Shown in pieces: positions 10,801 to 43,502 of a stretch of 64,000 nt of DNA. The position numbers and the translations under genes are program-made. The notes below the pieces were generated by a model. That model ran no database searches and had not been told where the DNA came from. It worked only from the letters and a program-made list of their open reading frames with translations. The number at the start of each line of letters is the position of its first letter. The first letter of the stretch is position 1. Source of the stretch: Heteronotia binoei (Eukaryota); the NCBI RefSeq assembly GCF_032191835.1, contig NC_083226.1, positions 21,266,001-21,330,000 of the forward strand, written 5' to 3'.

Positions 10801-13800
10801 CCTCAGACGTGGAGTTTTAAAATGAAACATTTTCTAATTCTCACTTTTTTTTCTCCAGGTAATCCATACCCATTCCGCGTGAGGGAACCTAACCGGCCCA
10901 AACCAGTTGATCGATGGACAGAAAAACGAGCACTGTTTGGGATCTATGACAACATTGGGATTTTGGGTAAGTATGAGAAAGACAAAGAATTTCAGTGGAT
11001 GAACGAAATTATACTTTTAGTGGTAAATGGGATGAGCAAGTTAAAGCTCTTGTGCAGTAAACCGGAACCGTTTTTACTGGTTCTATTAAAATAGTGCTGC
11101 AGTGAGGTGTTATTCTGAAGGCTGGGCATTCAGGTTGTGGGTGATGATAGGGACATTTTAATTTGGTTGAGCTAGATTTTATTTATTACATTTTTATCAT
11201 GTCCTTTCCCCACAGAGCTCAGGGTAATATACTCCATTTTATTCTCACAACATCCCTGTGAGATCGTTCAAACTGCCAGAGAGGGATTACTTCATAGTTA
11301 CCCAGTATGGATTTTTCCCCGGGGTGGGTGGTTGAGTAAGCAGGATTTGAACTTGTGTCTTTTCATCAGATCTCGGAAGCTAAGCATGGTCAGCCCTGGT
11401 TAGTTCTTGGGTGGGAGACCACCAAGGGAAGCCAGGATTACTGCACAGAGGCAGGCAATGGCCAGCCATTTCTGATTTGTCTCTTGCCTCAAAAACCCTA
11501 TGAGGCTGCTATCAGTCAGCTCTGGCTTGATGGTCCTTTGTGCCACTGCTTTTCGTTGCTTCCACAGTACTGGCTGTCTTTGGTAGGATTAAACGAATTC
11601 AAAAGCAGCAGGGTACCCGAAGACTTCAGTGTTGTCTCCTCTGCCGCTTTACTGTTTTTGCTTGCAACAACCAATAAGTGCGGCGCAATGGCATTGGCAT
11701 TTCAAAAGCAGCAGCCAGCCTTTCCTACTTCCCTGCCTACTTGTCAACCCAGGACAGTAGATCTGGTCTCTTGCTGGATTGGATCCCAGCCATCTCACCA
11801 TGTGATGTAGAGAAGCGGGTGAAGGCAATCACTGCTGTTTCTCTCCCCCCCCCCCCCCCATGCACACTCTTCTTAAGTTTTGTATTAGCTGCTTGCATCT
11901 CTGTTTTCATCTTTCTTCTTCTAACTTTCCGTTCCCTGTTTTAATGTTTCACTGTTCCCACGTATCAGTTTCTTCTCCCCATTTCTTGCTTGGTTAACAT
12001 TATGCTTCTGGTGATCTTTTTTTCCCCTTTTCCCTTCATTTCTTGATCTGAGGTCTCAAATTATTGTTGATGAAACAGCATTCCTTTTTTTCCCGCACCA
12101 AAATAACCTCTACAAGTCTATACATGCTTGCAGTCATTTTGCTGTAATGATGAAATACTGAAGGAAAATCATCCTGCCTTTGTTAAGGTGGAAGTTGCCA
12201 TCAGTTTTCTTCATATCCTCATATCTCTGTTCTCTCCACCCATAAAAGAGATCTTTAAGTGTCTTTCCTTCTCTCCAGTCTGGCCTTCAGTCCTCCTTTC
12301 AAGTGAAGCTAGCATATGCTTTGAAGAAATTGGAGAGGGGACTTCTTCATTTCCCCATGGAAAAAGTGATGTAAAAGATCAATTTTTTTTAATCTGGGTA
12401 GGGGGAGTGATAAAGAAAATGCGACCTATATTTGTTTAGACAGATATACCCCACTTTCTCCCCAGTGGGGACCCAGAGTGCCTTGTAACCATGTCACCCC
12501 ATCCTCCATTTTATACTCACAACAGCAGAATGACTGGCTTTAAGTCACCGTGCTACCATGACAGAGCGGGGATTCAGACATGGGTCTTCCAGATTCTAGC
12601 CTGACACTTTAAACCAGGGGTGGCCAAACTTGCTTAATGTAAGAGCAACATAAAATAAGCATCAGATGTTTGAGAGCTGGAAGACAGGAGCAAATATTAC
12701 GCACACATCTTTATGAAAACTCTTAATACTTTCTTTGCACAGAAAGACAAAATACATATATGCGCAGTTAGCAACATGATCATGCATGGTAGAAGGAAAC
12801 CTTTTTGAAAAACAAAAGCTGGGAATAACAGTCCCCATAAGACTAGTATAGGGAAAGGTTTTTTGGCACCTGTGGGAGTAGGAAACACACACATGTACCA
12901 TATAAATCACTGACCACCGTTTGCATCATTATGCATCTCTTTGCCTTGACACCAAGGTTAGTAAATAGAGCTCCTACAAGAGCTATGAAACTAAGGGGGA
13001 ATCCTGCATCATCCAATTTAATTCCATCCCTTCTTCCAGTGGCTTGGTTCTTGCCCTCTCTTTCCCCACTCTAGGTCTCAGTGTGACCTCTGTGGTTGTG
13101 GAGAAGAGCTTGCAAACCTACCTATTCCCCACCTCGCCCAGCTTTGAGAGTAAGCCTGCATTAAGTCCCTCCTCGACCTCTGGGAGCCGCACAATTTGTG
13201 TGAAAGAGCCACATGTGGCTCCTGAGTCACAGTTTGGCCACTCCTGCTCTAAACACTGTACTAGGTGTGGTGCTCCCGAGAGATGGGAAGGATGGCCTCA
13301 AGGGAACATTCTGTGTCAGTTGCCATAGTATTTATTCATTTGATTTCTGCCTTGCCTTTCTCATCTCAATGTAGACCCAAAGCAGCTCATGTCATGTTCC
13401 CGTCTTCCATTTTATCCTCACAGCAACCACTCTGTGAAGTTAGGTTAGGTTGAGATTGTGTGACTGGCCCAAGGTCACCCAGTAAGCTGCTGCGGCAGAG
13501 TGAGGCTCTGGACCTGGATCTCCCAGATTCTAATCCAGCACTCTAACATGGCCCCACACTGGGTGAAGAAAGAAAGAAGAGGTGAATCAAGACTACATTT
13601 GTTCACCACTTGTAGACCCTAGTGAAAATAATGGACTCCAAAACTAGCTCCCCCCCTTGCCTGATGACATCTCCCGCCTCTTCCTTTCAGGAGACTTCCA
13701 CGCCCACCCCAAGGACCTGATCAGTGGCCCCATATGGCTACGCGGCTGGCGGGGCAATGAACTGCAGAGGTTGATCCGTAAGAAGAAAATGGTGGGTGAC

Positions 13801-13887
13801 CGGATGTTCGATGAGGATTACAAGAACTTGAACAAGCGGATAAGATTTTTGTACAGACGCTTCAACCGCACTGGGAAGCACCGCTAA
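7842..13887 (+). CDS. MRPL51: Mitochondrial ribosomal protein L51 (mL51), 131 aa; join(7842-7932,10859-10966,13691-13887)
   Basis: GT-AG exons in frame: [15 protein letters not shown]...; [21 protein letters not shown]; [35 protein letters not shown]...[18 protein letters not shown]. Matches mL51 motifs and is syntenic with NCAPD2. Confidence 0.97.
8300..9690 (-). mobile_element. Old degenerate RTE/BovB-like LINE, interrupted by a 5S-derived SINE
   Basis: [35 protein letters not shown] remnant (9154-9435); further RTE-like remnants to ~8300; boundaries approximate. Confidence 0.7.
10030..10303 (+). mobile_element. tRNA-derived SINE, Squam3-like
   Basis: GAGAGCCAGTTTGGTGTAGTGG A-box head, GGTTTGATTCC B-box, (TCT)n tail. 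Further copies at ~3203-3345(-), 22382-22660, 26505-26738(-), 27066-27348, 33305-33555(-), 42675-42948, 48152-48375(-), 50228-50475, 53010-53240(-), 53713-53998, 54000-54418(-), 57530-57930. Confidence 0.85.
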
Positions 13888-19429: not shown

Positions 19430-19755
19430 GTGATAATAAAGCTGAACTGAAAGAGCTGGCCAGTTGATAGCTAGGCGCAGCAGAAAGGGGGAAGACGAAA
19501 GGGAGGCTTCGGCCAGATTTCTGTCGTCTTTGCTGAGGAGTGACTCTCACTTGGCATGGGTCCAGGGGAGAGGCGGCTGGAAGGGCTTGGGCCGACGTCA
19601 TCCCTGGCTTGAGTGGGTGTGATGAGAGCGCACACTGGCTCGGTCTGGACTACCTTCTGGGAGGTGTAAGTCTGCAGCAATTTCTAGGAGCCTGCAGAAG
19701 GAAAGCTTTGGTGGGAAGCGGAGCCGTCTCCAAGGACAGAGGCGAAGGCAGCCAT
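19430..19755 (+). promoter_or_regulatory. Putative promoter and first exon of the VAMP1-like paralog
   Basis: gccAT|GTGAGT split start codon as in VAMP1 exon 1; near-consensus CRE CGACGTCA at 19593-19600; much less CpG-dense than the canonical VAMP1 promoter. Confidence 0.55.
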
Positions 19756-22700
19756 GTGAGTATTGAGGGTGGGTGGATATCTGACTCCCCTCTGCAGACT
19801 GGTGCCCCTTGAGCCGTGCTGTTGCAACAGTGTCTTCTCTGTCCGGTCCACCCATTTGGTATTTCCCACCCAGCTTTGGCATTTGCCCGATGCTCCGAGA
19901 CCTAAGAGCTTCCTTGACACCTTTGCACCTGTTGCATCAGAACATGGCAACAGTTGCCAAAGTGACTGAGAAGGTGGTGGTGGTGAGATAAATTGTTGCT
20001 GGGGAGGGGGAATGCTTATTCACTCCACACGCCCCTGGAATGCGGAGGAGAAACGCTCTGAGCCGTGTTCGGTGTCCTTCGTAGCCCCCCTGGGACCTTG
20101 GGCTGGTAGTCCTCCTAACTTACCTCACAGGGTTGTTGGGAGATAAAGCAGAGAGAGCTTGGGAGGGAGGAGACAGGGTGGATGCAGTGTGATGCGGGAG
20201 GACTGAGGAGAAACAATTTTTCTTCAGGCCAGTTTGGCTAGGGATCCTGGGTTTTTTTTGTGGGTTTTTTGGCCATCTGGGCTCAGAGCAGGGATCACTG
20301 ATGGTGTCTGTGGGGAGGAGGTGTTTGTGAATTTCCTGCACCGTGTAGGAGGCTGTACTAGATTACCCTGGAGGTCCCATCCGAACCTATGATTCTACGG
20401 CCCCCGGTTCAGATCTCTCCTCGCCACGGAATTCATTGGGGTGGCTTTGGGCCAGTCATAGTCTATCCACCCGACCTACCTCCCAGGGTTGGCGTGACAA
20501 AGAAGGGGTATGGAAGAATTTGCCTTGAGCGGGAGGAAAAACTGGATAAATCGGCTTGTTTGGAGTCCAGGTTCCGAGGAGTGCTCTTTGGGGGCGGCGG
20601 CTTTCCCAAAAAAGAGAGCTAGACGCTTTGGGGGAAAGTTGCTTAAAGGTTTCTTGGCTCTGCGGCAGCGCTTGCAAGGCGGAAAAAAATGCGCCTAGTC
20701 ATGAAAGAAGCCCTGAGCCTTGCGACGCCGCCCTTTCCAGCCTCGCTCTCCCCTCCCTCCCCGTAGGCGAGAGACTGCCCTGCAAGAGGGGGCGCTGGAG
20801 ACGGTGGGCTGAGCAGGATCCAGCCGGGCGCGAAGAGGAGGCGGCCGCTTCTCCGAGGGCGGGGGAGGGGCCGGTCCAAAGCAGGTCTCGGAAGTAAGGG
20901 GGCCCTTCGGACCGGAGCTTGCTAGCGAGGAGGATGGCGGTCGGCCACGGTTGCCAGCCTCCAGATGGGACCTGGGGATCTCCCGAAATTACACTGGTCT
21001 CCTCCAGGCGACAGCGAACGCCCCCCCCCCCCTCCCTGGAGAAAAATGGCTGTTTGGAAGGGTGGACTCTGGACTCGCATCCTTGCGGAGCGCCCTCCCG
21101 TCCCTAAACCCCTCTCTCCCCAAGGCTGCACCCCACATTTCCATAGATAGGTTCAGCCACCATCCGGTGGCACAGTGGGGCGGCCAGATCTACTTCATCA
21201 GGGGGCGGGCTGGCCCCCAGCAGCAGGGGAAGTGGTGCAGATCCAAGCTAGAGGGACAGTGTGTTGCTAGGATCTAGCCAGCTTCTTTACTTGGGATCAG
21301 GGCTTTTTTGGGAGAAAAAGCCCAGCAGGAACTCATTTGCATATCAGGCTACGCCCCCTGACATCGCCATTATTTCACATCGCCAGTCAGGGCTTATTTA
21401 CATATTAGGCCACACCGCCTGGTGCCAAGCCAGCCGGAACTGCGTTCTTGTGCATTCCTGCTAACCCCGCCCACCATCCTGCTTGGGATCAATACTCCCT
21501 CTAAGCTGTGGAGTCTTTTGAGCAAAAATTCTACTTCGTTGAGCTACTGGCATTAAAATCGTGAGCTCTACTGCATAAATGAGTTTGCTTCGGGTCCATT
21601 TTTCCTGAGCTGAGACAAAAATGAGTGAGCCAGAGGCTAAATAACTGTGAGGTAGCTCCCACTAACTCAGCTTAGAGGGAACACTGCTTGGGATGCCAGA
21701 AATTGCTTTGAATTTTTTTTTTTTTTGCAAGCAGGGACTCCAGAATTGCTTGATCAGGGGAGGAAACATCTGTGTGAGGCAGGACTTTCATTTCCCCCCC
21801 TCCCCTGCCCTTTTATCACTGGAAAGGAGCTCCCCCCATTAACTCTTGGGGGGCAATAATACGTACATACAGTTTTTGGAACTTTTGAAATGTATGCATG
21901 CAGCCCCTTGAGGCTTAGAAGTGGTGTGTAATTGACGGCAGGGGTAGTTTCCACGGTTTTAATGCAGGATAGAAAGTGAGGGGGGGATTTAAGCAAAATC
22001 TCTGGGTCAGAAGTCATAGAATCACAGAATTGGAAGGGACCTCTAGGCTCACCTGGTCCACCCCACCTGCACAATGCAGGGAATTCATAACCACCCCACC
22101 TGCACAATGCAGGGAATTCATAACTACCCCACACCCCCAGTGACTCCCTGCTCCATGTCCAGAAGATGGCAAAAAATCCCCCAGTCATCCTGGTGGCATA
22201 TTTGGGGCAGAACCCGTAGAGAACCAGAGTCAACAACTTGGCCCTTTTAGAACATTTGCCACTTGCAGATCAATAAACAGGAGCCCCGAAGTGAAGCCAG
22301 TAGGTTATTTCCCCTCTCTGTAGACAAAAAAGCAGCCCCAGGGTAGAAAACAACCTGAGATTTCCTTCCTCCCTTCCCCTTCCAGTTTGGTGTAGTGGTT
22401 AAGTGTGCGGACTCTTATCTGGGAGAACCAGGTTTGATTCCCCACTCCTCCACTTGCACCTGCTGGCCTTGGGTCAGCCATAGCTCTCGCAGGGGTTGTC
22501 CTTGAAAGGGCAGCTGCTGTGAGAGCTCTCTCAGCCCCACCCACCTCACAGGTTGTCTGTTGTGGTGGAGGAAGATAAAGGAGATTGTGAGCCGCTCTGA
22601 GACTCTTTGGAGTGGAGGGCGGGATATAAATCCAATTTCTTCTTCTTCCCCTTCCCTTTCCCTTCTCTTCCCTTCCCACTGTCAAGTCCCAGCTGATTTA

Positions 22701-25700
22701 TTGCAACCCTGTGGGGTTTTCAAGGCAAGAGCTGTTCAGAGGTGGTCTGCCATTGCCTGCTTCTGCCTAGCAACCTTCCATTTCTTTGGAGGTCCCCCAC
22801 CCAAGTACTGACTAGGACTGACCTTCCTTAGCTTCTGAGATCAGGCTAGCCTGGGCTTTCAAGGTCATGGCTTTCTGCAACTGTGATGGTTTTTAGAATC
22901 TCAGACCCTGGGATGAGAAGGGTCCCATTTGTTTTTGCTGAGGGAAACTGATCCAAGGCAGTACTTCAGTGAAATGGCTTTGTCATAAAAAGCGTTGATG
23001 GACTCCACTTCTCTCATCCCAGAGAGATAATGCCAACAATGCTATAAAATAATCATGATTAGCAATGACAGATGTTTGAAACAAACTCTGAGGGGCAGGG
23101 GGGAATGTTTGTAGGGGAAAAGCCCAGCAGGAACTCATTTGCATATTAGACCACACCCACTGACACCACCATTGTTTCGCACAGGGTTTTTTTGCAGAAA
23201 AAGCCCAGCAGGAACTCATTTGCATATTAGGCCACGCCCCTGACACCAAGCCAGCTGGAACTGTGTTCTTGTGCATTCCTGCTTTAAAAAAAACAAAAAG
23301 CCCTGCTGAGGGGGTTGTGAAACAAAATGACTCCTGCCACTACACAGATTTTGCTTTCTTGCATTTTATGTGTGTGTGTGTGTGTGGGGGGGGAACTTTC
23401 ATTTTTTTCCTCCCCTGCCCTTTTTTCACTGGAAAGGAGCTTCCCCCCCAATATATGTATTACTCCACTGTGGGAGGGGTCATAGTAATTAATTGATTGA
23501 TTGATTGATTGATTGATTTGTTGGAATTTTAAAAAAGTATGCATGCAGCCCTTTGAGGCTTAGGAGTTACATTTGATTCCTGCAGGATACCATTTTATTT
23601 ACTTGGTGCATAGTCCGCCTTTCTCCCTGCGACACAAGGTAAGATACTCTGGAGTTCACTGATTTATTTATAACATTTATTAGGCACTTTATGAAACGCA
23701 AAGTGGATGGCTTACAATGCAGATAATATACATAAAAAACAAAAATACATAAAATACATAAAAACCAAAAATTTAAAATCACTAATTAGGAGCAGTGTGC
23801 TCCTTCTTTGTCTGTGTGTGTGTGAGAGAGAACAGACGGAAGTGAGAAGTCTATACATCAAAGAGGTAGAGGCAGAAGGGTAAACAGGAATGAACCCACA
23901 GTTTGCCTGTCTACCCAACTTACTCTCTTGTAAGCCCCCCCTCTCTGGAGTCTGAGGCTAAGAGACAGCACCAAGGCCTTCTCTTCCAATGGTAAGTTCA
24001 CAAGAAAGCCACGAGGAATGACTGAAACCAGGGGTGGAGTTCTAGCAGGAGCTCCTTTGCATATTAGGCCACACACCCCTGATGTAGCCAATTCTCCAAG
24101 AGCTTACAGGGCTCTTTTTTGTAAGCTCTTGGAGGATTGGCTACATCGAGGCCAATGTTCCCTCTAAGCTGCAGAGTCTTGTGAGCAAAAATTCTACTTT
24201 GTGAGCTACTGGTATTAAAGTTGTGAGCTGCTGGCATTAAAGTTGTGAGCTACTGCATAAATTAATGTGCTCTGGGGTCATTCTTCCTGAGCTAAGACAA
24301 AAATGTGTGAGCTGAAAGCTAAAAATCTGTGAGCTCGCTCACGCTAACTCAGCTTAGAGGGACACACTGATCGGGGTGTGTGGCCTAATATGCAAAGGAG
24401 CTCCTGCTAGAATTCCACCCCTGACTGAACCACCCTGAAACATTTGTTATGAATGAGGACTGCTTGGTTGCTCACACCTGTGTGACTTGCAGGGGTGAAT
24501 ATTGGTAGCAGATAGTACCCCAAATCTTTTTTTTGTACTTGACCTGTTATCTATGACTGACTGACCTGTTATCTTTGCAGGTCTGATCCAGCACAGCCAC
24601 CTCATCTTGAGGCAGAGCCAGAAGGGGGAGAATCTTCTGGCGGTCCCCCCCCACCGCCCCCAAATTTGACCAGCAATCGCCGGCTGCAGCAGACTCAAGC
24701 CGAAGTGAATCAAGTGAGTCCGTAATATCCCGGCTTCCTCAGACTGGCCTCACGCCTGTTTTTCTGCCCATTTGTGAGGGGGGCCTCCTTTCTTTCCTCT
24801 TTCCCCCCTCTCAGGTGGTGGACATCTTGCATGACAACATGACCAGAGTCATACAGCGCGACGAAGCGCTCAGCAGCTTGGATGACAAAGCGGACTCTCT
24901 CCACGAGAGCGCCAAAATTTTTGAAAACAGCACGACCGCTCTTGCGAGGAAGTACTGGTGCCAAAACATGAAGGTGAGCTTGCAACGGACGATTCCCTAG
25001 AACGGTACGAGACACGTCGCTTTTTGCGGAAGGCCTGGAATAGTAGACATCACATGACCAGGGCTTTTTTTTTTGTAGCAGAGACTCCTTTGCATATTAG
25101 GTCACACACCCCTGAGGTAGCCAATCCTCCTGGAGCTTACAGTAGGCCCTGTACGAAGAGCCCTGTAAACTCCAGGAGGATTGGCTACATCAGTGGGTGT
25201 GGCCTAATAGGTCAAGAGCTTGGGAGTTCTACTGGAGCCTTCATTATCAATGGAGGCCCAGATAGCAGCCACTGCCAAGTCAGCGTTTTTTCACCTGAAG
25301 TGGGCAAGGCAGTTGGCTCCCTTCCTGGAGCGCCGGGACCTAGCAACAGTGATCCATGCAACGGTCACCTTAAGATTGGATTACTGTAATGCCCTCTACA
25401 TGGGGCTGCCTCTGTGCCGAACCCGGAGGTTGCAGCTGGTGCAGAACGCAGTGGCTAGGCTGCTATTGGGGCTCCCGAAGTGGGAGCACATACAGTCGGG
25501 GCTACGCGGACTGCACTGGTTGCCAGTAACTTACCGGGTTCGTTACAAAGTGCTGGTTATTACCTTTAAAGCCCTATATGGCTGAGGACCTGCCTACCTG
25601 AGGGACTGTCTTTCCCCATACGAACCCTAGAGAGCACTGAGGTCAGTAGGGAAGAACCAGCTGGCTATCCCCGGACCAAAGGAGGCAAAACTATAAAACA

Positions 25701-27422
25701 CTCGCACACGGGCCTTCTCTATCGCAGCTCCACACCTATGGAACCAGCTCCCGGAAGAAGCGCAAGCCCTGCGGAGCCTTGACCAGTTCCGCAGGGCCTG
25801 CAAGACCACCCTTTTCAGGATGGCCTTTGCCGGCTGAGCGACTGATGTTAGGTGACTTCTATCACCATTATTTTTATGAACAGAATTAGCACCTAAAATC
25901 TATTTGTATTTGTTTTAAATTGGAATGTTTTTAAGACTAATGTGATTTTAAACCCTTGTATAATTATATGAATATGTTGTTAGCTGCCCTGAGCCCGCTT
26001 TGGCAGGGAGGGCGGGATATAAATAAAATATTATTATTATTAATATGCAAAGGCATTCCTGCTACAAAAAAAGCCCTGGTCACTGGGGGATTGGTTGATG
26101 AGGTAGGTCATTGCTGTCGATGCCTCTTGTGATGGAACTGGAAGATTTCACTGTTGTGGAAGGCTTCCATCTGTGGCGTAGCTGAAGTAGCGGATGGGGT
26201 CAAGAGGGAAAGTGCGTCTTGACAGTGCCCCCCCTGCCAAAGGAGCGCGAGACTATGGCATATGTAAAGGAGTTCCTGCTTTTAAAAAAAGCCCTGGACA
26301 TGATGCTCTCACTCATCATATTTCCTCTCCCTCTTTCTTTCCAGATGATGATTATTTTGGGACTGATCTGTGGTATTGCGGCCATAGCAATTATAGGTAA
26401 GTATCATGAGGAATTAGGATCATGAGGCCCTAAGGCCTGGAGAAAGGGTACCACCTATCTGTGAGTTATGGAAGCAGGGGTGGGCAATCCTTGGGGCCCG
26501 GATTTATATCCTGCCCTCCACTCTGAATCTCAGAGTGGCTCACAATCTCCTTTACCTTCCTCCCCCACAACAGACACCCTGTGAGGTGGGTGGGGCTGGA
26601 GAGGGCTCTCCCAGCAGCTGCCCTTTCAAGGACAACCTCTGCCAGGCCATTCCAGTAGGTGCAAGTGGAGGAGTGGGGAATCAAACCTGGTTCTCCCAGA
26701 TAAGAGTCCGCACACTTAACCACTACACCAAACTGGCTCTCAGCTTCTCAGCAGTGGTCTCTCTTCCCAAGACAGGGATACTTGCCCTGCCCTGGATAGC
26801 CCAGGCAAGCCCGATCTCATCAGATCTTGGAAACGCAGCAGGGTCGGTTCTGGCAAGTACTTGGATGGGAGAATTCCTTTGGAATACCAGCAGTCGGGAG
26901 GGCAGGGGCAGGCTTTATTCAGCCACTTCCATGAATATCCTCCAGGTCCCCAGTAGGGGTCAGTCTCAGTCACCAGAGGTTGCCATGACTTCCAGGTGTG
27001 TGTGAACATGCACAAGATAATTTTAAAAGATAGGGAGACCATTTTTAAAACTTTAAAAGATAGAGAGAGCCAGTTTGGTGTAGTGGTGAAGTGTGCGGAC
27101 TCTTATCTGGGAGAACCGGGTTTGATTCCCCACTCCTCCACTTGCAGCTGCTGGCATGGCCTTGGGTCAGCCATAGCTCTCACAGAGGTTGTCCTTGAAA
27201 GGGCAGCTGCTGTGAGAGCCCTCTCAGCCCCACCCACCTCATAGGGTGTCTGTTGTGGGGGAGGAAGATATAGGCGATTGTAAGCCGCTGTAAGTCTCTG
27301 ATTTAGAGAGAAGGGCGGGGTATAAATCTGCAGTCTTCATCTTCTTCTTATGCAGCATAACCTCTCGTTTTCTCTTTTTCTTCCCTTCATTGCTTCTGCC
27401 CACAGTCTACTTTTTCACCTGA
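19754..27422 (+). CDS. Divergent tandem paralog of VAMP1 (synaptobrevin-1-like R-SNARE), 120 aa; join(19754-19755,24581-24713,24815-24973,26345-26396,27406-27422)
   Basis: Open frame [120 protein letters not shown]. Exon sizes and phases mirror VAMP1 (2/133/159/52/17). Exon 1 (gcagccAT|gtgagt) is the least certain part. Confidence 0.9.
24029..24423. mobile_element. Family A MITE with a nested family B MITE (~24151-24368)
   Basis: Outer TIRs CAGGGGTGG with TSD ACTGAAAC/ACTGAACC; inner CA(A/G)TGTTCCCTCTAAG element. Confidence 0.85.
25212..26042 (+). mobile_element. L2-type LINE 3' fragment in intron 3 of the VAMP1-like gene, inserted into a MITE
   Basis: GVLLEPSLSMEAQI..TAKSAFFHL, RLDYCNALYMGLP, LQLVQNAVARLL, LHWLPV..RVRYKVL, AFSIAAP.LWN.LP; (TTA)n tail. 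Confidence 0.88.
26077..26210 (+). repeat. 134-bp direct repeat, copy A (copy B at 27661-27794)
   Basis: Ungapped alignment, 19 mismatches counted by hand (~86% identity). Confidence 0.9.
26785..27005 (+). mobile_element. 5S rRNA-derived SINE
   Basis: CCCGATCTCATCAGATCTTGGAA..GCAGGGTCGG..AGTACTTGGATGGGAGA..GGAATACC resembles the 5S internal control region, followed by a GAGGCAGG tail. Copies at ~2410-2615(-), 8995-9178, 11365-11545, 22680-22862(-), 41475-41625(-). Confidence 0.8.
27066..27348 (+). mobile_element. Squam3-like SINE in the last intron of the VAMP1-like gene
   Basis: Full-length copy ending ~50 bp before the exon-5 acceptor. Confidence 0.88.
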
Positions 27423-28259
27423 GACACTGCCTCTCTTCTTCCATCTGCAGCTTCCCTTCCTCCCTCCGCACATCCCCACACACATACCTCTCATTCTGGC
27501 TTGATCGTCTGGTTTTCTTTCTGCAGGTGTCTTTACACATTCTTCCTCCCCCCCCCCCCACAACCCTTTCACTGCAGCCCCTAACAAGGTCTGTTCAGCT
27601 GGGAGGATGGCTTTGGGTGTAGTGGAGGCAATGCTGAGAGTGTGTCCCTGCCTTTAAGGATGGTCACTGAGGGATTGGTTGGTGACATAGGCTATTGCTA
27701 TCTATGCCTCTTGGGATGGAACTGGAAGATTTCACCGGTGTGGAGGCCTTCCCTCAGTGGTGTAGCGGAAGGAGCAGATGGGGTCAAGAGGGAAGGTCAT
27801 GATAGCGACCCTCCCAAAGAGGAATTATACTATTAATATAATGAAAGAGGAATCCAGTACTCTGTTCCCTAAACTAATTTATAGGATTTGTTGACATATC
27901 GTACTTCAAGACAGTTGACAATGACGACACCTACAATAAGGTGCACACCACACAAAAGGAAAAGGGGACAGAAAGGGAAGAGAAAAACAAAGCAAATTCA
28001 GATATGAACACTTAAATAGCTCATCTATGTGTTCCGTTATGACCAGGCAGATCATCTTCTGTAGGAGACGGTTATGGGAGGGTGCTGAGCCCAGCGGTAG
28101 TTGGTCTAACACACACGGATGGTGGAGGCCTTGCTTTCTGCACTTCTCCCAGATGTGACTAGTGAAAAGGATGCTGAGTTGCCGGATTGGAGAGGTTCCC
28201 CCCATAAACACATGGCCTGGCCCCCAGCCTTTCCTCGCTGTTTATGTGGCAACATCTGG

Positions 28260-28477
28260 CAGTGCCGGATTAAACCCTGTGGAGGCCCCTAGGCAGTCGA
28301 AAACTCGGGGCCCCTCTCACAAATTATCTCCTAATATCTCCTGCAGGCACCTTCTCAAAAGCCCCTCTGACAAAGCTGTGGGGGAGAGGCAGAGAAAGGC
28401 AAACTGGCCCAGGGCCCCTAGAAGCGTGGGGGCCCATAGGCCGGGGCCTACTCAGCCTATTTGTTAATCCGGCCCTG
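28260..28477. mobile_element. hAT MITE (CAG(T/G)GCCGGATTAA TIRs) in the paralog 3' region
   Basis: Perfect 8-bp TSD ACATCTGG at 28252-28259 and 28478-28485. Confidence 0.88.
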
Positions 28478-29254
28478 ACATCTGGTGCTACAAACACCAG
28501 GAGATGGTTGTTCTTGTCAGCTCTTAAAGCACAGGGGCGCTGAGCGGTGGGGAAAGGGAGCACCGGGTCTCAGTGATGTAGCCAGCGAAGGTGTCAGCTG
28601 GCTGTACAAACCTCTGTCTCGCTATGATGCCAAGAAGGGTCTGAAAGGAGAGAGAGAAACCCACCAGGCCTGTGAGGGAGAGAGGATACCGTTGGCGGCT
28701 GTGCTGGGAATGGTCTCTGCTTTCCCTGCAGCATAAAGAGCCATGCACATCTCATTTGCTCAGAGTCCACCTCCATGCAGTTTCCGGTCTCTCCCCACCT
28801 CAAGGGACGACAGAGAGAGCCCAAAACGAAGCGACTGTCTTCTCTTTGAGACTGCCATTTTCTCATGGCTCACTTGGAGGGCCAGAAGTACTACTTAGAT
28901 CCAAAGCCAGATGATGATGGGAATGACAGTTTAGTAAACACACGGACCCCTCAATTTCTCCTGGACACACATCGTATCTTCTGCTGCCTCGGTTGAGATA
29001 GGACTGCCTTGACTGCATTTCTTGCTCCTTCTCCTGGGTGTGTTCTTTGCCTTTCTCTGTGGCTGCCTCTGTCGATCGTACAGGCCAAAATATGCCCCAC
29101 CCGCAGGCCCTCCACATCCAAAGCAAACATATGCTCAGAAGCTCAGCTGTTCTCTTGTCCCCATGGGTGATTTCTGCCCTTGCACACAACTGTAGCTGTA
29201 CTCTTTCCTGGTCCTGTGTCACAACTCGCCTGGGTCCTCTGAATGAAGTCTTCT

Positions 29255-29260
29255 AATAAA
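29255..29260 (+). terminator. Candidate polyadenylation signal of the VAMP1-like paralog
   Basis: AATAAA ~1.8 kb downstream of the stop at 27422, at the end of mostly non-repetitive UTR-like sequence. Confidence 0.35.
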
Positions 29261-29834
29261 CACTTCTCTAGCCCCTGAGTTTGCCTCCACTTTCTGAGCA
29301 CCTGATGGAAGAGTGGTCTTTCTTGAGGTTTGTAAGGCCGAAAGAACATGAAAGGCATGATCAGGAATGGGTGCATGTGATAGGTTACCATGTAATGTGT
29401 TCTAACCCAGCCCCTTTTGTACACAGTGAGAGCCAATGCTCCCTTTTCTGCATTGCCCAAGGACTTCTACAGATGTCACCAGCTTGAAGAGCCAATATGG
29501 CATCGTGGTTAGAGTGATCCGCTGTGCTATTCTCTGCTACTAGCAGCCGAGAGTATGAGGTGGGGATGGGGCTATCTGTTGTGCTAGGCTAGGAGGCTGC
29601 GTCATGCATGGTGTCCAGTGACTTCTGGATGGGTGGGTGTCTGTTTAAAGTTTGGGTGGCACCATCAAGACTCACAAATGCATTGCAGCATCAACTTTAG
29701 CGGACAAGAAGGAATGAATTCTCGGTTGGAAAGATTTTTGTGTGGAGAGAAGAATGAAATAAGTCTCCAAACCAAGCCTGGCTCGTGATATTTCTGTGTA
29801 AAAGTGAAAAACAGGCTGGGAAGCGCTGTGAAGC

Positions 29835-38419: not shown

Positions 38420-38782
38420 AGGCGGAGCTACCCCGTCCGCCGCGGCCCGGGATTGGAGAAAACTCTCGCCCCCTGTCCCAAGATGAAAGCCGTTCGGGGC
38501 AGGGGACGGACGCTCATTGGCCCCCCGCCTTTTGCCGGCAAGGCTCGGGGGGCGCGGCGAGGAGGCGCCCTGCTCCGATTGGCTCTCCTCCCCAGGGGCG
38601 TGGCCTCCCGCTCCCCTCCCCTCTTATAAAAGGGAGGGGGGTGGCGGCTGGGCTCCTGCTGCAGCAGTTTCCGTCGCCCGCGGGGGAGGCTCTTTGCTTT
38701 GGCGCGGACTCCCGGAGCCCCCCGGCCCGCTCCAGCCCCTGCTCTGCCGCCCAGGAGGTGCCTGCGAGGGAAGACCGGCCAT
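38420..38782 (+). promoter_or_regulatory. VAMP1: VAMP1 CpG-island promoter and first exon
   Basis: TATAAAA 38625-38631; three ATTGG boxes (~38450, ~38515, ~38578); GC box GGGGCGTGGC ~38595; ggccAT|GTGAGT at 38781-38782. Confidence 0.85.
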
Positions 38783-41700
38783 GTGAGTTTCAAAGCAACC
38801 CGTGGAGGCATCGCCGCCGCTTTGCTCGGCCACCGTTGCGGCACCAGCCGAGTGGCGCATTGCACCACCGCCCCCCCTTCCCTCCCTCCCTCCCTCCCCG
38901 CCATCCTCCTCCCCTGTCCGGTCCGGATGGGGACGGGTCACGCGTCGCCTTGGCCGAGCCCCTCGTCGCCACCCACCCAACCCCCGGCCGGGCTTTCTCC
39001 CCTTCGGGCTGGGATGCACTTTTCTCCCGGACTTTGCAAGCTTTGGGCTGCCCTGCCATTAGGCAAACTAGGCGATTGCCTAGGGCGCTGGTCTTGGGGG
39101 GGTTCTGAATTGGGTGCCTCCCGTGTGACTTGGTGATGTTATTAGTGCGGGGTGGGGAGGGAGAGACGCCAGAAGTTAGCTTTGCCTAGGGTGCCTAGGG
39201 CTGGCCCTGCCCGTAGAGATAGGGGGGGGGGTTGCTAAAAAAAACACAAATGGGACGGAGTTGAGAAGGGGGGCGGGCAGGATTGGGTTCACACCTGACG
39301 GGCAAACATGCTTTCTGTGCGGATGGCCCTGAGGGAGCGGGTAGGGGGAAGCTCTGGCCGAGCATGGTGGGGGGTGTCACAGGAGATCAGCTGGGAGGAT
39401 GGTGTGAGTTCCCGCGGAGTGCAGAGCAGGCAGGCGCTGCCCCGGAGAAAGCCTACCTTGCAGGGGTGGTGGCAGCCAGTGTTCCCTTTAAGCTGAGTTA
39501 GTGTGAGCTAGCTCACAGTTTTTTAGCCTCTGGCACACACGTTTTTGTCTTAAGTCCGGGAAGGATGACCCCAGAGCAAACTCATTTATGCCGCAGCTCG
39601 CAACTTTAATGCTACTAGCTCACAGCTTTAATGCTAGTAGTAGCTCACAAAGTAGAATTTCTGCTCACAAGACTCCACAGTTTAGAGGGAACATTGGTGG
39701 CAACGTGTGTGTGTGTGTGTGTGTGTGTGTGAGTGAAGGTGATGGGGCCGGGAAGGTCGACCCCTACTGGAAGGGTGGTGCATGACCAGTGCCCCTAGAG
39801 GAAGAGGGGAATGGGCGTTTGGGCACTGCTTTGATTAGGGGAGTCCAAGGGGACTTGCTTCCCTTTGCTTTAAAGAGATCAGTGGGCTGAACCCGGATAC
39901 AGCCGTTGCTTCCCTGGCTAGAGATGCCAGCCTCCAGGCGGGACCTGGGACTCCCTTGGAATCACAGCTCATCTTCAGGCTACAGAGATCAGTATCCTTG
40001 GATAAAATGGATGCCTTGGAGGGGTTGAATCTGTCTGGAATTGCGCTCTGTTGTGGGTCCTTGGGCTCCATCTCTAAGACTTACCCAACTTGGATCTAGC
40101 AACCCTATCTCCCCACCAGCAGGGGGAACCTGAGAGCCCTACACCCCACTCATCTTGCAGAATCTTGCACCAGATGGCCCATATTGGTGGGACCCCCCCC
40201 CCCCTTTCCCCTCTTTGTCGCCCAGCTAGCAATACGGCTCTGTTCTCAGAACTAGCACTTTGCTGCTGCCTTTTTGGACTTCTTGCGGGTAGGAATAGGG
40301 AAGCAGGAAAGCCAATGGATTTTGCTGCCTGCTCTCTGCTGGTGCTACCGATTCCCTTCTTGTGTGACACAGCAATTCCTTTGTGTGGCTGTCTAAACCT
40401 GAGCAGCCCTGAGCTCTTGCCCGGCTTCCTGGGATGATGCTAAAAAGGAGGGATCCTCTTCTCTCTCTCTCTCTCTCTCTGACCTTGTTTGCAGCAACGA
40501 TAACTCCGACCCAACAAGCCTGTGGCTAACAATTCCGGAAAGACAGACAGGGTGCATTTTCAAGGATCGGACTGCTTCCTGTACATCCACTTGGTGATTT
40601 TCACCATGGACCCGTTTGCTGGGCCGGCTGTTGTTTCCACAATGCAGAAGGGATTGGGGAGTCTGAGAGTGGCAGGCTTGTTGCCCCCCTCCCAAATTCA
40701 TAGCTCGTATGCAGTTTGAAGGATGGTGGCTTCCTGGCCTATGCTTCTATGATGTCTCTGGGTGCAACTGTCTTACTCTACCTGTGTTCCCCATGTTAAG
40801 GAGAAACCTGCACCTGACAAAGTTCTTTGTGAGATGGTCACAACATTCTCACTTTGCTTCCCCTTGGTTTCTTTTGGTTCCTCTCGATAACCACGCTTGG
40901 CTGGCTTTTGTACTCTTGTGGTCTCCGCTGCCTTTCTTCTTGGGTTTGAAAAGCCCCAGCTGACTTGGACCAATGGGATATCAGGCCCTGCATCCTGTTG
41001 CTGAGGCCGGCCGGCCAGGAAACAGTCAAAGATGACAGATCTTCAACATCTGGTGGCCAAAAAGAGTTTATTCCTTCGAGAAGGGACATTCTGTTCAGAC
41101 TTATGGTTGCCACTGCCCTTAGTCTTTTCTTGTATCCCTGTATTTCATGAGTTAATGATGCATGGTCTGAAGGAATGCATATTGGATCTGCTATCACTCT
41201 GTTTCATTGCGTGGCCCTGAATTCATATGAACATATGAAGCTGCCTTCTCCTGAATCAGACCCTGGGTCCATCGAAGTCAGTATTGTGTGCTCAGACTGG
41301 CAGCGGCTCTCCAAGGTCTCAAGCTGAGGTTTTTCACACTTATTTGCCTGGACCCTTTTTAGTTGGAGATGCCGGGGATTGAACCTGGGGCCTTCTGCTT
41401 ATCAAGCAGATGCTCTACCACTGAGCCACCATCCCTGAATTCTCCACTTGTTAGTGGAAGCACTGTCAAGTTACAGCTGACTTGCTCGATAGGATTTTCA
41501 GGGCAAGAGATGTTCATAGGTGGTTTGCCCTCTATGCAGCAACCTTTGAATTCCTCGGTGGTCTCTCATCCAAGAACAAGGGCCAACTCTGTTTAGCTTA
41601 TGATGGCATCAGGTTAGCCAGGGCCTCCAGGTCAAGGAAAACCCAATGTGTGCAGTCTTCTAGTAAAGTTCCTATCATACTGCCCTTTGGTTGTCTTTTC

Positions 41701-43502
41701 CTCCTTGGAGGAATTACTCCTTGGTCATCTTGGTGGCCTTCTATACCTCTTCTGGTTCTGAGATCCTTGGCCTGCCTCATGTTGCCTGCTGTGTAACATA
41801 TGGGTCCGCCTCTTCTTGTAGTGGTTTGGCTGCTTATTTCAGTCTGCAAATATTGAGGATTGACAGCCGCGACCTTTCTTTTTTCTTTTTGTCTCCCCAG
41901 GTCTGATCCAGCTCAGCAACCTGCCCCTGCGGCAGGAGAAGGTGGCGAAGGGGCAGGAGGCGCCCCAGGGCAGCCTCCAAACTTGACCAGCAATCGCCGT
42001 CTGCAACAGACCCAAGCCCAAGTAGAAGAAGTAAGTGGGTAGAGGGGAGGGGAGGAGCCGTGGCTCAGCGGTGGTGCATCTGCTTGGCATGCAGGAGGTC
42101 CCAGGTTCAATCCTTGCCATCTCCAGTTAAAGAACAGGCAGTGGGTGATGGGAAAGACCTTTGCCTGAGACCCTGGAGAACGGCTGCCAGTTTGAGTAGA
42201 CAGTACTGACCTTGATGGACCAACTGTCTGACTTGATATAAAACAACCTCACGTGAGGATGTATTCGGCTGCTCTGCAGTGGATGTGTGCCTTGATCCTT
42301 CCTAGGGGGGAGAGAGAGAACAGTCCTTTTTCATTCTCCAGGTGGTGGATATCATGCGTGTGAATGTGGACAAAGTCTTGGAGCGAGATCAGAAGCTATC
42401 GGAACTCGACGAGCGAGCGGATGCCCTCCAAGCTGGGGCCCAAGTCTTTGAAAGTAGCGCAGCAGCTCTCAAGAGGAAGTACTGGTGGAAGAACTGTAAG
42501 GTGAGCATTCAAGAAGCAGGGTCTAGCAAAAATTCTGAGATGGCTCTGGCATTCTGGCGCCTTGCCTGAGTTGGACAAGGCTGAGAAATAGGATGTCTTG
42601 GAGACCTGCTGTTGGGCAACAGTGAAGAATGGGATAGACCAGTGATCTAATTTGGGATAAGGTGATGTGTTGAGAGCCAGTTTGGCGTAGTGGTTAAGTG
42701 CGCGGACTCTTATCTGGGAGAACCGGCTTTGATTCCCCACTCCTCCACTTGCACCTGCTGGAATGGCCTTGGGGCAGCCATAGCTCTCATAGGTGTTGTC
42801 CTTGAAAGGGCAGCTGCTGTAAGAGCTCTCTCAGCTCCACCTACCTCACAGGGTGTCTGTTGTGGTGGTGGGGATGGTAGAGGTGATTGTGACTGCTCTG
42901 AGATTTAGAGTATAGGGTGGGATATAAATCCAATATCATCATCATCTTATGGGAGAGTCTCCTCTTGCGAGACTTCAGCAGGCATCCGTCTGCCCATGGT
43001 GTAAGTTTGTGGGTGGGTGCTTTGGAGTTAAGGATGAATGACCCCTAAGCATAGAGAGATGCATTGTCAGTGAATGGTTGTGTCTAATTTTGGCGACTCT
43101 TCTCTCTAGATGATGATCATGCTGGGAGTGATCTGTGCTATTGTGGTGATTGCAATTGCACGTAAGTACTACGGGGAACCAGGCCACTGAGCCGCAAACA
43201 TTGGATAGCGGGAGCCATCTGCCCTGCCCGTCATGGGTGCAGGGGAACCAATATCTGCTGCCTTTCTACTCTGGGTGGTAGCCAAGATCAGGAAATCTGG
43301 GAAGTGTAATGTTTCCCTTTAGGGCAATGGGGCGTGTTTTCTCTGCTGAAGGAAAGGCAGGAGTCTGGCAGGGGAAGGGAGGGAAGAGCCTTCCTTTCCT
43401 GGATGTTCAACTGCCTGAAGTGTGGGGACGCTCGGTGTAATGTACCCTCTTGTTCTCTCCTTTCTTTTCCATCTTCTGCCCCCAGTTTACTTTTTTACCT
43501 GA
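38781..43502 (+). CDS. VAMP1: Vesicle-associated membrane protein 1 (synaptobrevin-1), 119 aa; join(38781-38782,41901-42030,42342-42500,43110-43161,43486-43502)
   Basis: [123 protein letters not shown] and YFFT ends are VAMP1-type; synteny with MRPL51. Confidence 0.96.
42675..42948 (+). mobile_element. Squam3-like SINE in VAMP1 intron 3
   Basis: Full-length copy with tRNA-like head. Confidence 0.88.

What the first reader, a model, noticed from the sequence alone, without database searches (positions are those of the whole stretch)
19754..27422. Intact, fast-diverged tandem duplicate of VAMP1 (a second synaptobrevin-1-like R-SNARE)
Seen: a five-exon gene upstream of VAMP1, same strand, with the same split ATG (AT|G), 159-nt SNARE exon, 52-nt TM exon and 17-nt YFFT exon. 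All sites are GT-AG and there are no stops. The exon-3 peptide is only 27/53 (51%) identical to the neighbouring VAMP1. Known: VAMP1/2/3 SNARE cores are almost invariant across vertebrates. Using VAMP2 numbering, the inward layer positions stay compatible (L32, Q36, V39, V43, M46L, V50M, R56 zero layer, L60, L63, A67, L70, A74, F77, A81T, L84) and acidic D57/D64/D65/D68 are kept, while outward-facing positions change. Both copies share MSDPAQ, an Ala at K83 and a hydrophobic residue at Q76, pointing to a lineage-specific duplication from VAMP1. Inference: a neofunctionalised v-SNARE under purifying selection for bundle formation but with new surface partners. I do not recall such a gene being characterised, although automated 'VAMP1-like' annotations may exist.
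Basis: partly seen in the sequence, partly recalled or inferred. Interest (0 to 1): 0.85.

Follow-up and report, generated by a model that had tools for sequence, protein, structure and literature searches.

The report
Fast-evolving second VAMP1 gene of lizards
Next to the gecko's normal VAMP1 gene lies an intact, selectively maintained but unusually fast-evolving copy of it, shared by geckos, a skink and a cordylid lizard; databases label it only "VAMP1-like" or "VAMP2-like" and nobody has studied it.

Summary
A five-exon, 363-nt ORF (120 aa) lies between MRPL51 and VAMP1 on the + strand. It has the split start codon, the 159/52/17-nt exons, GT-AG sites throughout and no stops. Its SNARE exon is 27/53 identical to the neighbouring VAMP1.

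It is a real gene. Orthologues with the same structure and intact ORFs lie at the same place in five other geckos, a skink (Tiliqua) and a cordylid (Hemicordylus). NCBI calls them "VAMP1-like", "VAMP2-like" or "VAMP1".

A tree joins them into one clade (100/99). That clade groups with squamate VAMP1 and excludes archosaur and mammal VAMP1 and VAMP2/3 (AU p = 0.008). So VAMP1 was duplicated before geckos and skinks split.

Selection is purifying but relaxed. Omega is 0.40 against 0.06 for VAMP1, and omega = 1 is rejected. The zero-layer Arg and 14 of 16 core layers match VAMP1, while 24 of 39 other SNARE positions differ.

RNA support in this species is thin. A few reads cover exons 2-4 in one of two libraries, none cover the last exon, and no splice junction was seen.

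I found no paper on it. New binding partners are untested. It is a new, uncharacterised member of a known family.

The parts
19593..19600 (+). CRE-like motif cGACGTCA in the putative promoter, about 155 nt upstream of the start codon
   Evidence: Conserved in all seven species in the alignment of the exon-1 region. Its function is inferred.
19754..19755 (+). Coding end of exon 1: AT of the split start codon, followed by the donor GTGAGT
   Evidence: The string AGCCAT|GTGAGTA is conserved in five geckos, Hemicordylus and Tiliqua.
19890..19982 (+). Alternative 5' coding exon used by NCBI's model XP_060092474.1 (31 codons, not conserved)
   Evidence: The N-terminus of P0151 matches the window sequence.
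23586..23638 (+). Cassette exon of the same NCBI model (53 nt, same phase as exon 1)
   Evidence: P0151 residues 32-49 match the window.
24581..24713 (+). Exon 2 (133 nt): G of the ATG, the Pro-rich N-terminus and the start of the SNARE motif
   Evidence: Reads of run X5 lie on it.
24815..24973 (+). Exon 3 (159 nt): SNARE core with the zero-layer Arg, through the juxtamembrane linker
   Evidence: Pfam PF00957, 55 bits for this exon alone. It is 27/53 identical to VAMP1.
26345..26396 (+). Exon 4 (52 nt): transmembrane anchor
   Evidence: It aligns to the VAMP2 transmembrane segment in 2KOG.
27406..27422 (+). Exon 5 (17 nt): VYFFT plus the TGA stop
   Evidence: The acceptor, frame and stop are conserved in all seven species. 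No RNA reads lie here in X5.
28540..29498 (+). Conserved downstream block, probably 3'UTR. It holds an open alternative terminal exon (28804-28911) and an AATAAA at 29255.
   Evidence: 69-83% identical to four other geckos. It is homologous to the annotated C-termini of the Sphaerodactylus X1 and Euleptes proteins.
38781..43502 (+). Neighbouring canonical VAMP1, the parent copy (five exons, 119 aa)
10897..13878 (+). MRPL51 exons upstream (synteny anchor)
   Evidence: PF10244 matches at G000:C4:21276897-21276980 and 21279687-21279878.

Best explanation
This is a functional brevin-type R-SNARE gene that arose by tandem duplication of VAMP1 in the squamate stem lineage, before geckos and skinks/cordylids split. 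After the duplication the upstream copy changed quickly over most of its helix surface and its juxtamembrane linker. It kept the zero-layer Arg, nearly all hydrophobic core layers, the transmembrane anchor and the exon structure. Since then it has evolved under moderate purifying selection.

Inferred: it still zippers into four-helix SNARE bundles and acts as a vesicle SNARE. Regulators that read the VAMP surface, and the membrane-proximal lipid contacts, probably treat it differently from VAMP1/2.
For: Shown:
- Intact five-exon ORF.
- Orthologues with identical exon structure, intact frames and a conserved stop in Gekko, Sphaerodactylus, Eublepharis, Paroedura, Hemicordylus and Tiliqua. All lie downstream of MRPL51. 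Sphaerodactylus, Paroedura and Tiliqua also show VAMP1 downstream.
- The paralogue clade has 100/99 support. Paralogues plus squamate VAMP1 separate from all other brevins at 100/99. 'All canonical VAMP1 form one clade' is rejected, AU p = 0.008.
- Omega is 0.40 over seven species, and omega = 1 is rejected (lnL -1762.9 against -1788.0). Omega is 0.32 in the SNARE region, 0.37 in the juxtamembrane/TM region and 0.94 in the N-terminus. VAMP1 has omega 0.063.
- dS between the paralogue and VAMP1 within a species (0.67-1.08) resembles gecko-skink orthologue dS, so there is no sign of recent gene conversion.
- 14 of 16 layers are identical to VAMP1 against 15 of 39 other SNARE positions (p = 0.001).
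- Pfam Synaptobrevin scores 91-93 bits, and the protein aligns full-length to VAMP2 of 2KOG and 1SFC.
- Exon 1 and its upstream motifs are conserved.
- RNA reads in X5 lie on exons 2, 3 and 4 but not on unique intron sequence.
Against: - No splice junction was listed, and depth is only about 1-9x from 6% of one run. A second library has none. No read covers exon 5 or the first 580 nt after it.
- No indexed RNA run holds exons 2-3.
- Omega is six times that of VAMP1. Layer codons are no more constrained than the other SNARE codons within the clade.
- Geckos have lost K85, K91 and W90 of the juxtamembrane linker, which could impair fusion.
- SNARE assembly was not tested.
Confidence: 0.72

Rival explanations
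1. It is a redundant duplicate under relaxed constraint, slowly decaying, with no distinct function. The retained layers are simply what has not yet mutated.
For: Omega is about six times that of VAMP1. Expression in the two transcriptomes laid is very low or absent. No diverged orthologue appeared among annotated proteins of lacertoids, iguanians, anguimorphs or snakes, which would fit loss.
Against: All seven orthologues keep intact ORFs, splice sites and stop codon, although dS reaches about 1 between lineages. Omega = 1 is rejected with 2dlnL = 50. The promoter and exon 1 are conserved.
Confidence: 0.1
2. It is an inhibitory or regulatory R-SNARE. It enters SNARE bundles through its conserved core, but the altered juxtamembrane linker (K85A, W90C, K91Q) and surface make the complexes poorly fusogenic or blind to regulators. 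It would then tune exocytosis rather than drive it.
For: The core layers are kept while the linker lost two basic residues everywhere, and one Trp in geckos. The role of these residues in VAMP2 is from my own knowledge of the literature and was not tested here.
Against: Hemicordylus and Tiliqua keep WW. In the Hemicordylus assembly the canonical VAMP1 SNARE exons are missing, which is hard to square with a purely inhibitory role. There is no functional data.
Confidence: 0.13
3. It is not a separate gene but an upstream set of alternative exons of VAMP1.
For: In Hemicordylus, NCBI merges both into one 'VAMP1' gene, and three isoforms splice paralogue exon 4 into the canonical exon-4 remnant.
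Against: It has its own conserved exon 1 and promoter, its own terminal exon with a stop, and a conserved downstream block. NCBI models it as a separate gene in five species. VAMP1 has its own split-ATG exon 1 at 38781.
Confidence: 0.03

Closest known systems
VAMP1 (synaptobrevin-1), the adjacent parent gene
   Same: Five-exon structure with a split ATG. MSDPAQ N-terminus, YFFT terminal exon, Ala at position 83 (a squamate VAMP1 trait), zero-layer Arg, 14 of 16 layers, and a single transmembrane anchor. The intron-4 read-through gives a VAMP1B-like tail.
   Different: Only 27/53 identical in the SNARE exon. Omega is 0.40 against 0.06. 24 of 39 non-layer SNARE positions are changed. K85A and K91Q occur in all paralogues, and W90C in geckos. 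All five clostridial neurotoxin scissile bonds I checked from my own knowledge have at least one residue changed.
VAMP2 / VAMP3 (solved in 1SFC, 2KOG, 1N7S)
   Same: Same Pfam family. Full-length, gap-free alignment with a register offset of +4.
   Different: The tree puts the paralogue with squamate VAMP1, not with VAMP2/3. So NCBI's 'VAMP2-like' label is a misnomer.
Other lineage-specific diverged brevins, such as Arapaima gigas 'VAMP2-like' (KAL4631133.1)
   Same: A brevin whose N-terminal half of the SNARE motif has diverged in a similar way (58% identity to exon 3).
   Different: The fish protein ends in VYFSS and keeps a canonical C-terminal half, so it looks like an independent VAMP2-type duplicate. 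Orthology was not tested in a tree (one search left it out).

Membership tests
Synaptobrevin / brevin R-SNARE (Pfam PF00957) | Sequence match above the family's curated cut-off | tested here: met
   91-93 bits for the full orthologues and 55 bits for exon 3 alone, against a cut-off of 26.4. 58 bits in the genome scan.
Synaptobrevin / brevin R-SNARE (Pfam PF00957) | Arginine at the zero layer | tested here: met
   R60 aligns with VAMP2 R56 and is invariant in all seven orthologues.
Synaptobrevin / brevin R-SNARE (Pfam PF00957) | Heptad hydrophobic layers -7 to +8 | tested here: met
   14 of 16 are identical to VAMP1; the other two are M46L and A81T. Changes in the other orthologues are mostly conservative.
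Synaptobrevin / brevin R-SNARE (Pfam PF00957) | Short N-terminus without a longin domain, and a single C-terminal transmembrane anchor | tested here: met
   There are 28 Pro-rich residues before the motif. The hydrophobic exons 4-5 align to the VAMP2 transmembrane segment in 2KOG.
Synaptobrevin / brevin R-SNARE (Pfam PF00957) | Forms a four-helix bundle with Qa, Qb and Qc SNAREs | not testable with these tools
   No usable Q-SNARE sequences were available for complex prediction. It needs a biochemical assay.
VAMP1 one-to-one orthologue | The only VAMP1-type gene at the MRPL51-SCNN1A locus, with a near-invariant SNARE core | tested here: not met
   A canonical VAMP1 lies downstream in the same window. 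The core is 51% identical. It is a paralogue derived from VAMP1.
Pseudogene | Disabling mutations, or omega not different from 1 | tested here: not met
   There are no stops, frameshifts or lost splice sites in seven species. Omega is 0.40, and omega = 1 is rejected.

The most novel reading that the evidence does not exclude
In some squamates the fast-evolving copy may have taken over from canonical VAMP1. In the Hemicordylus capensis assembly the canonical VAMP1 has no SNARE-coding exons 2-3. Only its exon 4, exon-5 region and 3'UTR remain, so the diverged gene is the only VAMP1-locus R-SNARE. That would mean a brevin with half of its SNARE surface replaced can do the job of VAMP1, or that VAMP1 is dispensable there. 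Either way it would be a natural experiment on which VAMP surface residues are really needed.
Probability: 0.2. Interest if true: 0.65.

Novelty: new member of a known kind. Interest (0 to 1): 0.45.

Why it matters
Brevin SNARE cores are among the most invariant vertebrate protein segments.

This clade has been kept since before geckos and skinks/cordylids split. It holds the core layers but has replaced about 60% of the other SNARE positions. That makes it a ready-made natural mutagenesis series. It could help separate what bundle formation needs from what complexin, Munc18/Munc13, synaptotagmin, the toxins and the membrane-proximal linker need.

It also corrects database names: "VAMP2-like" in four species, and "VAMP1" in Hemicordylus.

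Tried and rejected
- Ancient pre-amniote paralogue: rejected by the AU test (p = 0.008).
- Orthology with the Arapaima 'VAMP2-like' protein (best single identity, 58%): set aside because its C-terminus and second half are VAMP2-type.
- Metatranscriptome contigs X1 and X2: they cover only the interspersed repeats in the introns, not the exons.
- A second run search with exons 2-3 alone found no RNA holder.
- Presence in other squamates: the 10 kb upstream of VAMP1 in Rhineura and Candoia holds no paralogue exon or 3' block. In geckos and Tiliqua the paralogue ends 11-15 kb upstream of VAMP1, so this is inconclusive.
- Squamate VAMP1 as a clade excluding the paralogues: borderline (AU p = 0.039). 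I do not read anything into it, because the canonical sequences are nearly identical.
- Complex prediction was not run, because no Q-SNARE sequences could be supplied under its rules.
- Three literature searches found nothing on this gene.
- The search of earlier findings returned nothing.
Full report
**What is there**

A two-base coding end of exon 1 (AT, then the donor GTGAGT) is followed by exons of 133, 159, 52 and 17 nt. All have AG acceptors and GT donors. Joined, they give a 363-nt ORF of 120 codons plus TGA with no internal stop. My first pass put the exon-2 donor three bases too far; the correct end is 24713.

The canonical VAMP1 lies downstream on the same strand. Its exons are at 38781-38782, 41901-42030, 42342-42500, 43110-43161 and 43486-43502. 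It has the same split start codon and the same 159/52/17-nt exons.

MRPL51 exons lie upstream at 10897-13878. An SCNN1A-type ASC gene lies just past the window's end on the minus strand.

The two exon-3 peptides are 27/53 identical, exactly as reported.

**Which genome, and is the gene annotated**

A protein search with the open frame around exon 3 found seven database proteins at 76-98% identity, all from geckos:
- Heteronotia binoei XP_060092474.1, 'VAMP2-like'
- Sphaerodactylus townsendi X1 and X2, 'VAMP2-like'
- Gekko japonicus XP_015276224.1, 'VAMP1-like'
- Eublepharis macularius, 'VAMP2-like'
- Paroedura picta, 'VAMP1-like'
- Euleptes europaea, 'VAMP1-like'

The Heteronotia protein is identical to my model from residue 2 onward. 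Its extra 49 N-terminal residues are encoded at window 19890-19982 and 23586-23638. So the window is almost certainly H. binoei or a very close relative. NCBI's model there uses other 5' exons than the conserved split ATG.

The exhaustive HMMER search with exon 3 also gave a Hemicordylus capensis protein named 'VAMP1' (52% identity). A profile search added Tiliqua scincoides 'VAMP2-like'.

**Orthology and synteny**

The fetched loci show NCAPD2(-), MRPL51(+), the paralogue(+) and then VAMP1(+) in Sphaerodactylus and Paroedura. Gekko, Eublepharis, Hemicordylus and Tiliqua show MRPL51 then the paralogue. Tiliqua's canonical VAMP1 lies about 15 kb further on the same strand.

In all seven species exons 2-4 were found by exact match to the annotated proteins. 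The 17-nt terminal exon, with its acceptor, frame and TGA, is present even where NCBI did not annotate it. It reads VHFFT in Eublepharis and LYYLT in Tiliqua.

Exon 1 (AGCCAT|GTGAGTA) and an upstream cGACGTCA motif are conserved in all seven.

**Origin**

I built a maximum-likelihood tree of 32 brevins: the seven paralogues, 15 VAMP1, eight VAMP2 and two further brevins from this genome.
- The paralogues form one clade (100/99).
- That clade joins the squamate VAMP1 sequences, against crocodile, bird and mammal VAMP1 and all VAMP2/3 (100/99).
- Forcing all canonical VAMP1 into one clade costs 16 log-likelihood units and is rejected (AU p = 0.008).

Shared characters agree: Ala at VAMP2 position 83, the IAIA-type transmembrane end, MSDPAQ and the YFFT exon.

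The codon tree of the paralogues recovers geckos against Hemicordylus plus Tiliqua. dS between paralogue and VAMP1 within a species (0.67-1.08) is like dS between gecko and skink orthologues (0.8-1.2).

So VAMP1 was duplicated in tandem on the squamate lineage. This happened after it split from archosaurs and before Gekkota and Scincoidea split. Tuatara was not sampled.

No diverged orthologue appeared among annotated proteins of lacertoids, iguanians, anguimorphs, snakes, birds, crocodilians or turtles. Absence at the DNA level could not be tested properly.

**Selection**

| Measure | Paralogue | VAMP1 |
|---|---|---|
| Pairwise NG86 dN/dS | 0.17-0.68, typically about 0.3 | 0.04-0.06 |
| GY94 one-ratio omega, seven species | 0.40 | not fitted |
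| GY94 omega, matched species trio | 0.37 | 0.063 |

Fixing omega at 1 lowers lnL from -1762.9 to -1788.0.

By region, omega is 0.94 in the Pro-rich N-terminus, 0.32 in the SNARE motif and 0.37 in the linker plus transmembrane segment.

Evolution was strongly asymmetric. With crocodile or chicken VAMP1 as outgroup, the paralogue has 31-38 unique residue changes against 0-6 for VAMP1 (p <= 4e-5).

Relative to VAMP1, 14 of the 16 standard layer positions are unchanged, against 15 of 39 other SNARE positions (Fisher p = 0.001). Within the paralogue clade, however, layer and non-layer codons have the same omega (0.30 and 0.29). The picture is therefore an early remodelling of the surface, followed by moderate constraint on the whole helix.

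**Family membership**

Pfam Synaptobrevin matches at 91-93 bits. The protein aligns without gaps to full-length VAMP2 (2KOG) and to synaptobrevin-2 of the neuronal SNARE complex (1SFC), at an offset of +4. The zero-layer Arg is invariant.

The juxtamembrane linker differs. K85A and K91Q occur in all paralogues and W90C in geckos only. At least one residue of each scissile bond that I know for BoNT/B, TeNT, D, F, G and X is changed. That is description from my own knowledge, not a test.

**Expression**

One read-laying run on 24400-27999 was allowed.
- Contigs of the metatranscriptomes X1 and X2 cover only the interspersed repeats in the introns.
- Run X5 is raw RNA reads with the same species label, and 6% of it was read. 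Reads lie on exon 2 (eight reads from seven start points at 24620, all carrying a synonymous A>G), on exon 3 and on exon 4. Depth is about 1-9x. Nearly nothing lies on unique intron sequence (26080-26319).
- Run X6 has none.
- No read lies on exon 5 or the 580 nt after it, and no exon-exon joint was among those listed.

This fits a weakly and selectively expressed spliced mRNA. It does not prove the 120-aa isoform in this species.

A block at 28540-29498 is 69-83% identical among geckos. It contains an open alternative terminal exon (28804-28911) that matches the annotated C-termini of the Sphaerodactylus X1 and Euleptes proteins. The transcripts in X5 may end there, but I could not check.

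NCBI's multiple isoforms in Sphaerodactylus, Paroedura and Hemicordylus suggest transcript support there. I cannot see that evidence.

**How it most likely works**

Shown: it is a conserved, constrained, membrane-anchored R-SNARE with an intact core.

Inferred: it assembles with Q-SNAREs and marks a vesicle population for fusion, while regulators that read the VAMP surface and the linker's lipid contacts treat it differently from VAMP1/2.

An inhibitory or tuning role, or slow decay, cannot be excluded. Slow decay fits poorly with seven intact orthologues at dS near 1.

**Novelty**

Three literature searches found no paper on it. The gene exists only as automatic annotations with inconsistent names. 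It is a new, uncharacterised member of the brevin family, unusual for its rate.

**Side observations**

In the Hemicordylus assembly the canonical VAMP1 lacks exons 2-3. Only a canonical-type exon 4, the exon-5 region and the 3'UTR remain, about 13 kb downstream of the paralogue. NCBI isoforms X1-X3 splice into that remnant out of frame.

The gecko genome has four canonical brevin SNARE exons. Three of them each lie next to a PER gene, including a fourth brevin on contig 6 that mammals seem to lack.

Noticed in passing
L032:15100-36900 (Hemicordylus capensis, GCA_027244095.1 CM050091.1): Canonical VAMP1 has no exon 2-3 in this assembly. Only a canonical-type exon 4 (28345-28396), the exon-5 region and the 3'UTR remain downstream of the diverged gene. 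NCBI isoforms X1-X3 splice paralogue exon 4 into that remnant out of frame, and the merged gene is named VAMP1.
   Followed up: partly
G000:C6:91921282-91921461 (L002), with PER-type exons at C6:91839701-91842600: A fourth canonical brevin gene lies beside a PER gene, just as VAMP2 does (C15, 5.25 against 5.34 Mb) and the VAMP3-like gene does (C18, 22.84 against 22.88 Mb). It looks like a PER2-linked 2R ohnologue of VAMP1/2/3 that mammals lack.
   Followed up: partly
window:28540-29498: A block downstream of the YFFT exon is 69-83% identical among geckos. It holds an open alternative terminal exon (28804-28911) used in the annotated Sphaerodactylus and Euleptes isoforms, and an AATAAA at 29255.
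   Followed up: partly
window:26397-26423: Reading through the exon-4 donor gives the tail GKYHEELGS-stop. Similar read-through tails exist in other geckos (GKYHGELGS..) and in squamate VAMP1 (RKYYGEPG..). They resemble the intron-retaining VAMP1B isoform of mammals (from my own knowledge).
   Followed up: no
window:24620: All eight RNA reads of run X5 show G instead of A. This is a synonymous Pro codon change, presumably a polymorphism between individuals.
   Followed up: no
window:36671-37659: A 1-kb stretch between the paralogue and VAMP1 is 73% identical to sequence about 8-9 kb upstream of Candoia aspera VAMP1 (L040:1123-2121). It may be a conserved element or a shared repeat.
   Followed up: no
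window:22380-22640, 26500-26760, 27060-27340: tRNA-derived SINE copies in both orientations inside the introns account for nearly all the RNA-seq depth in the region. They made the first run search misleading.
   Followed up: no
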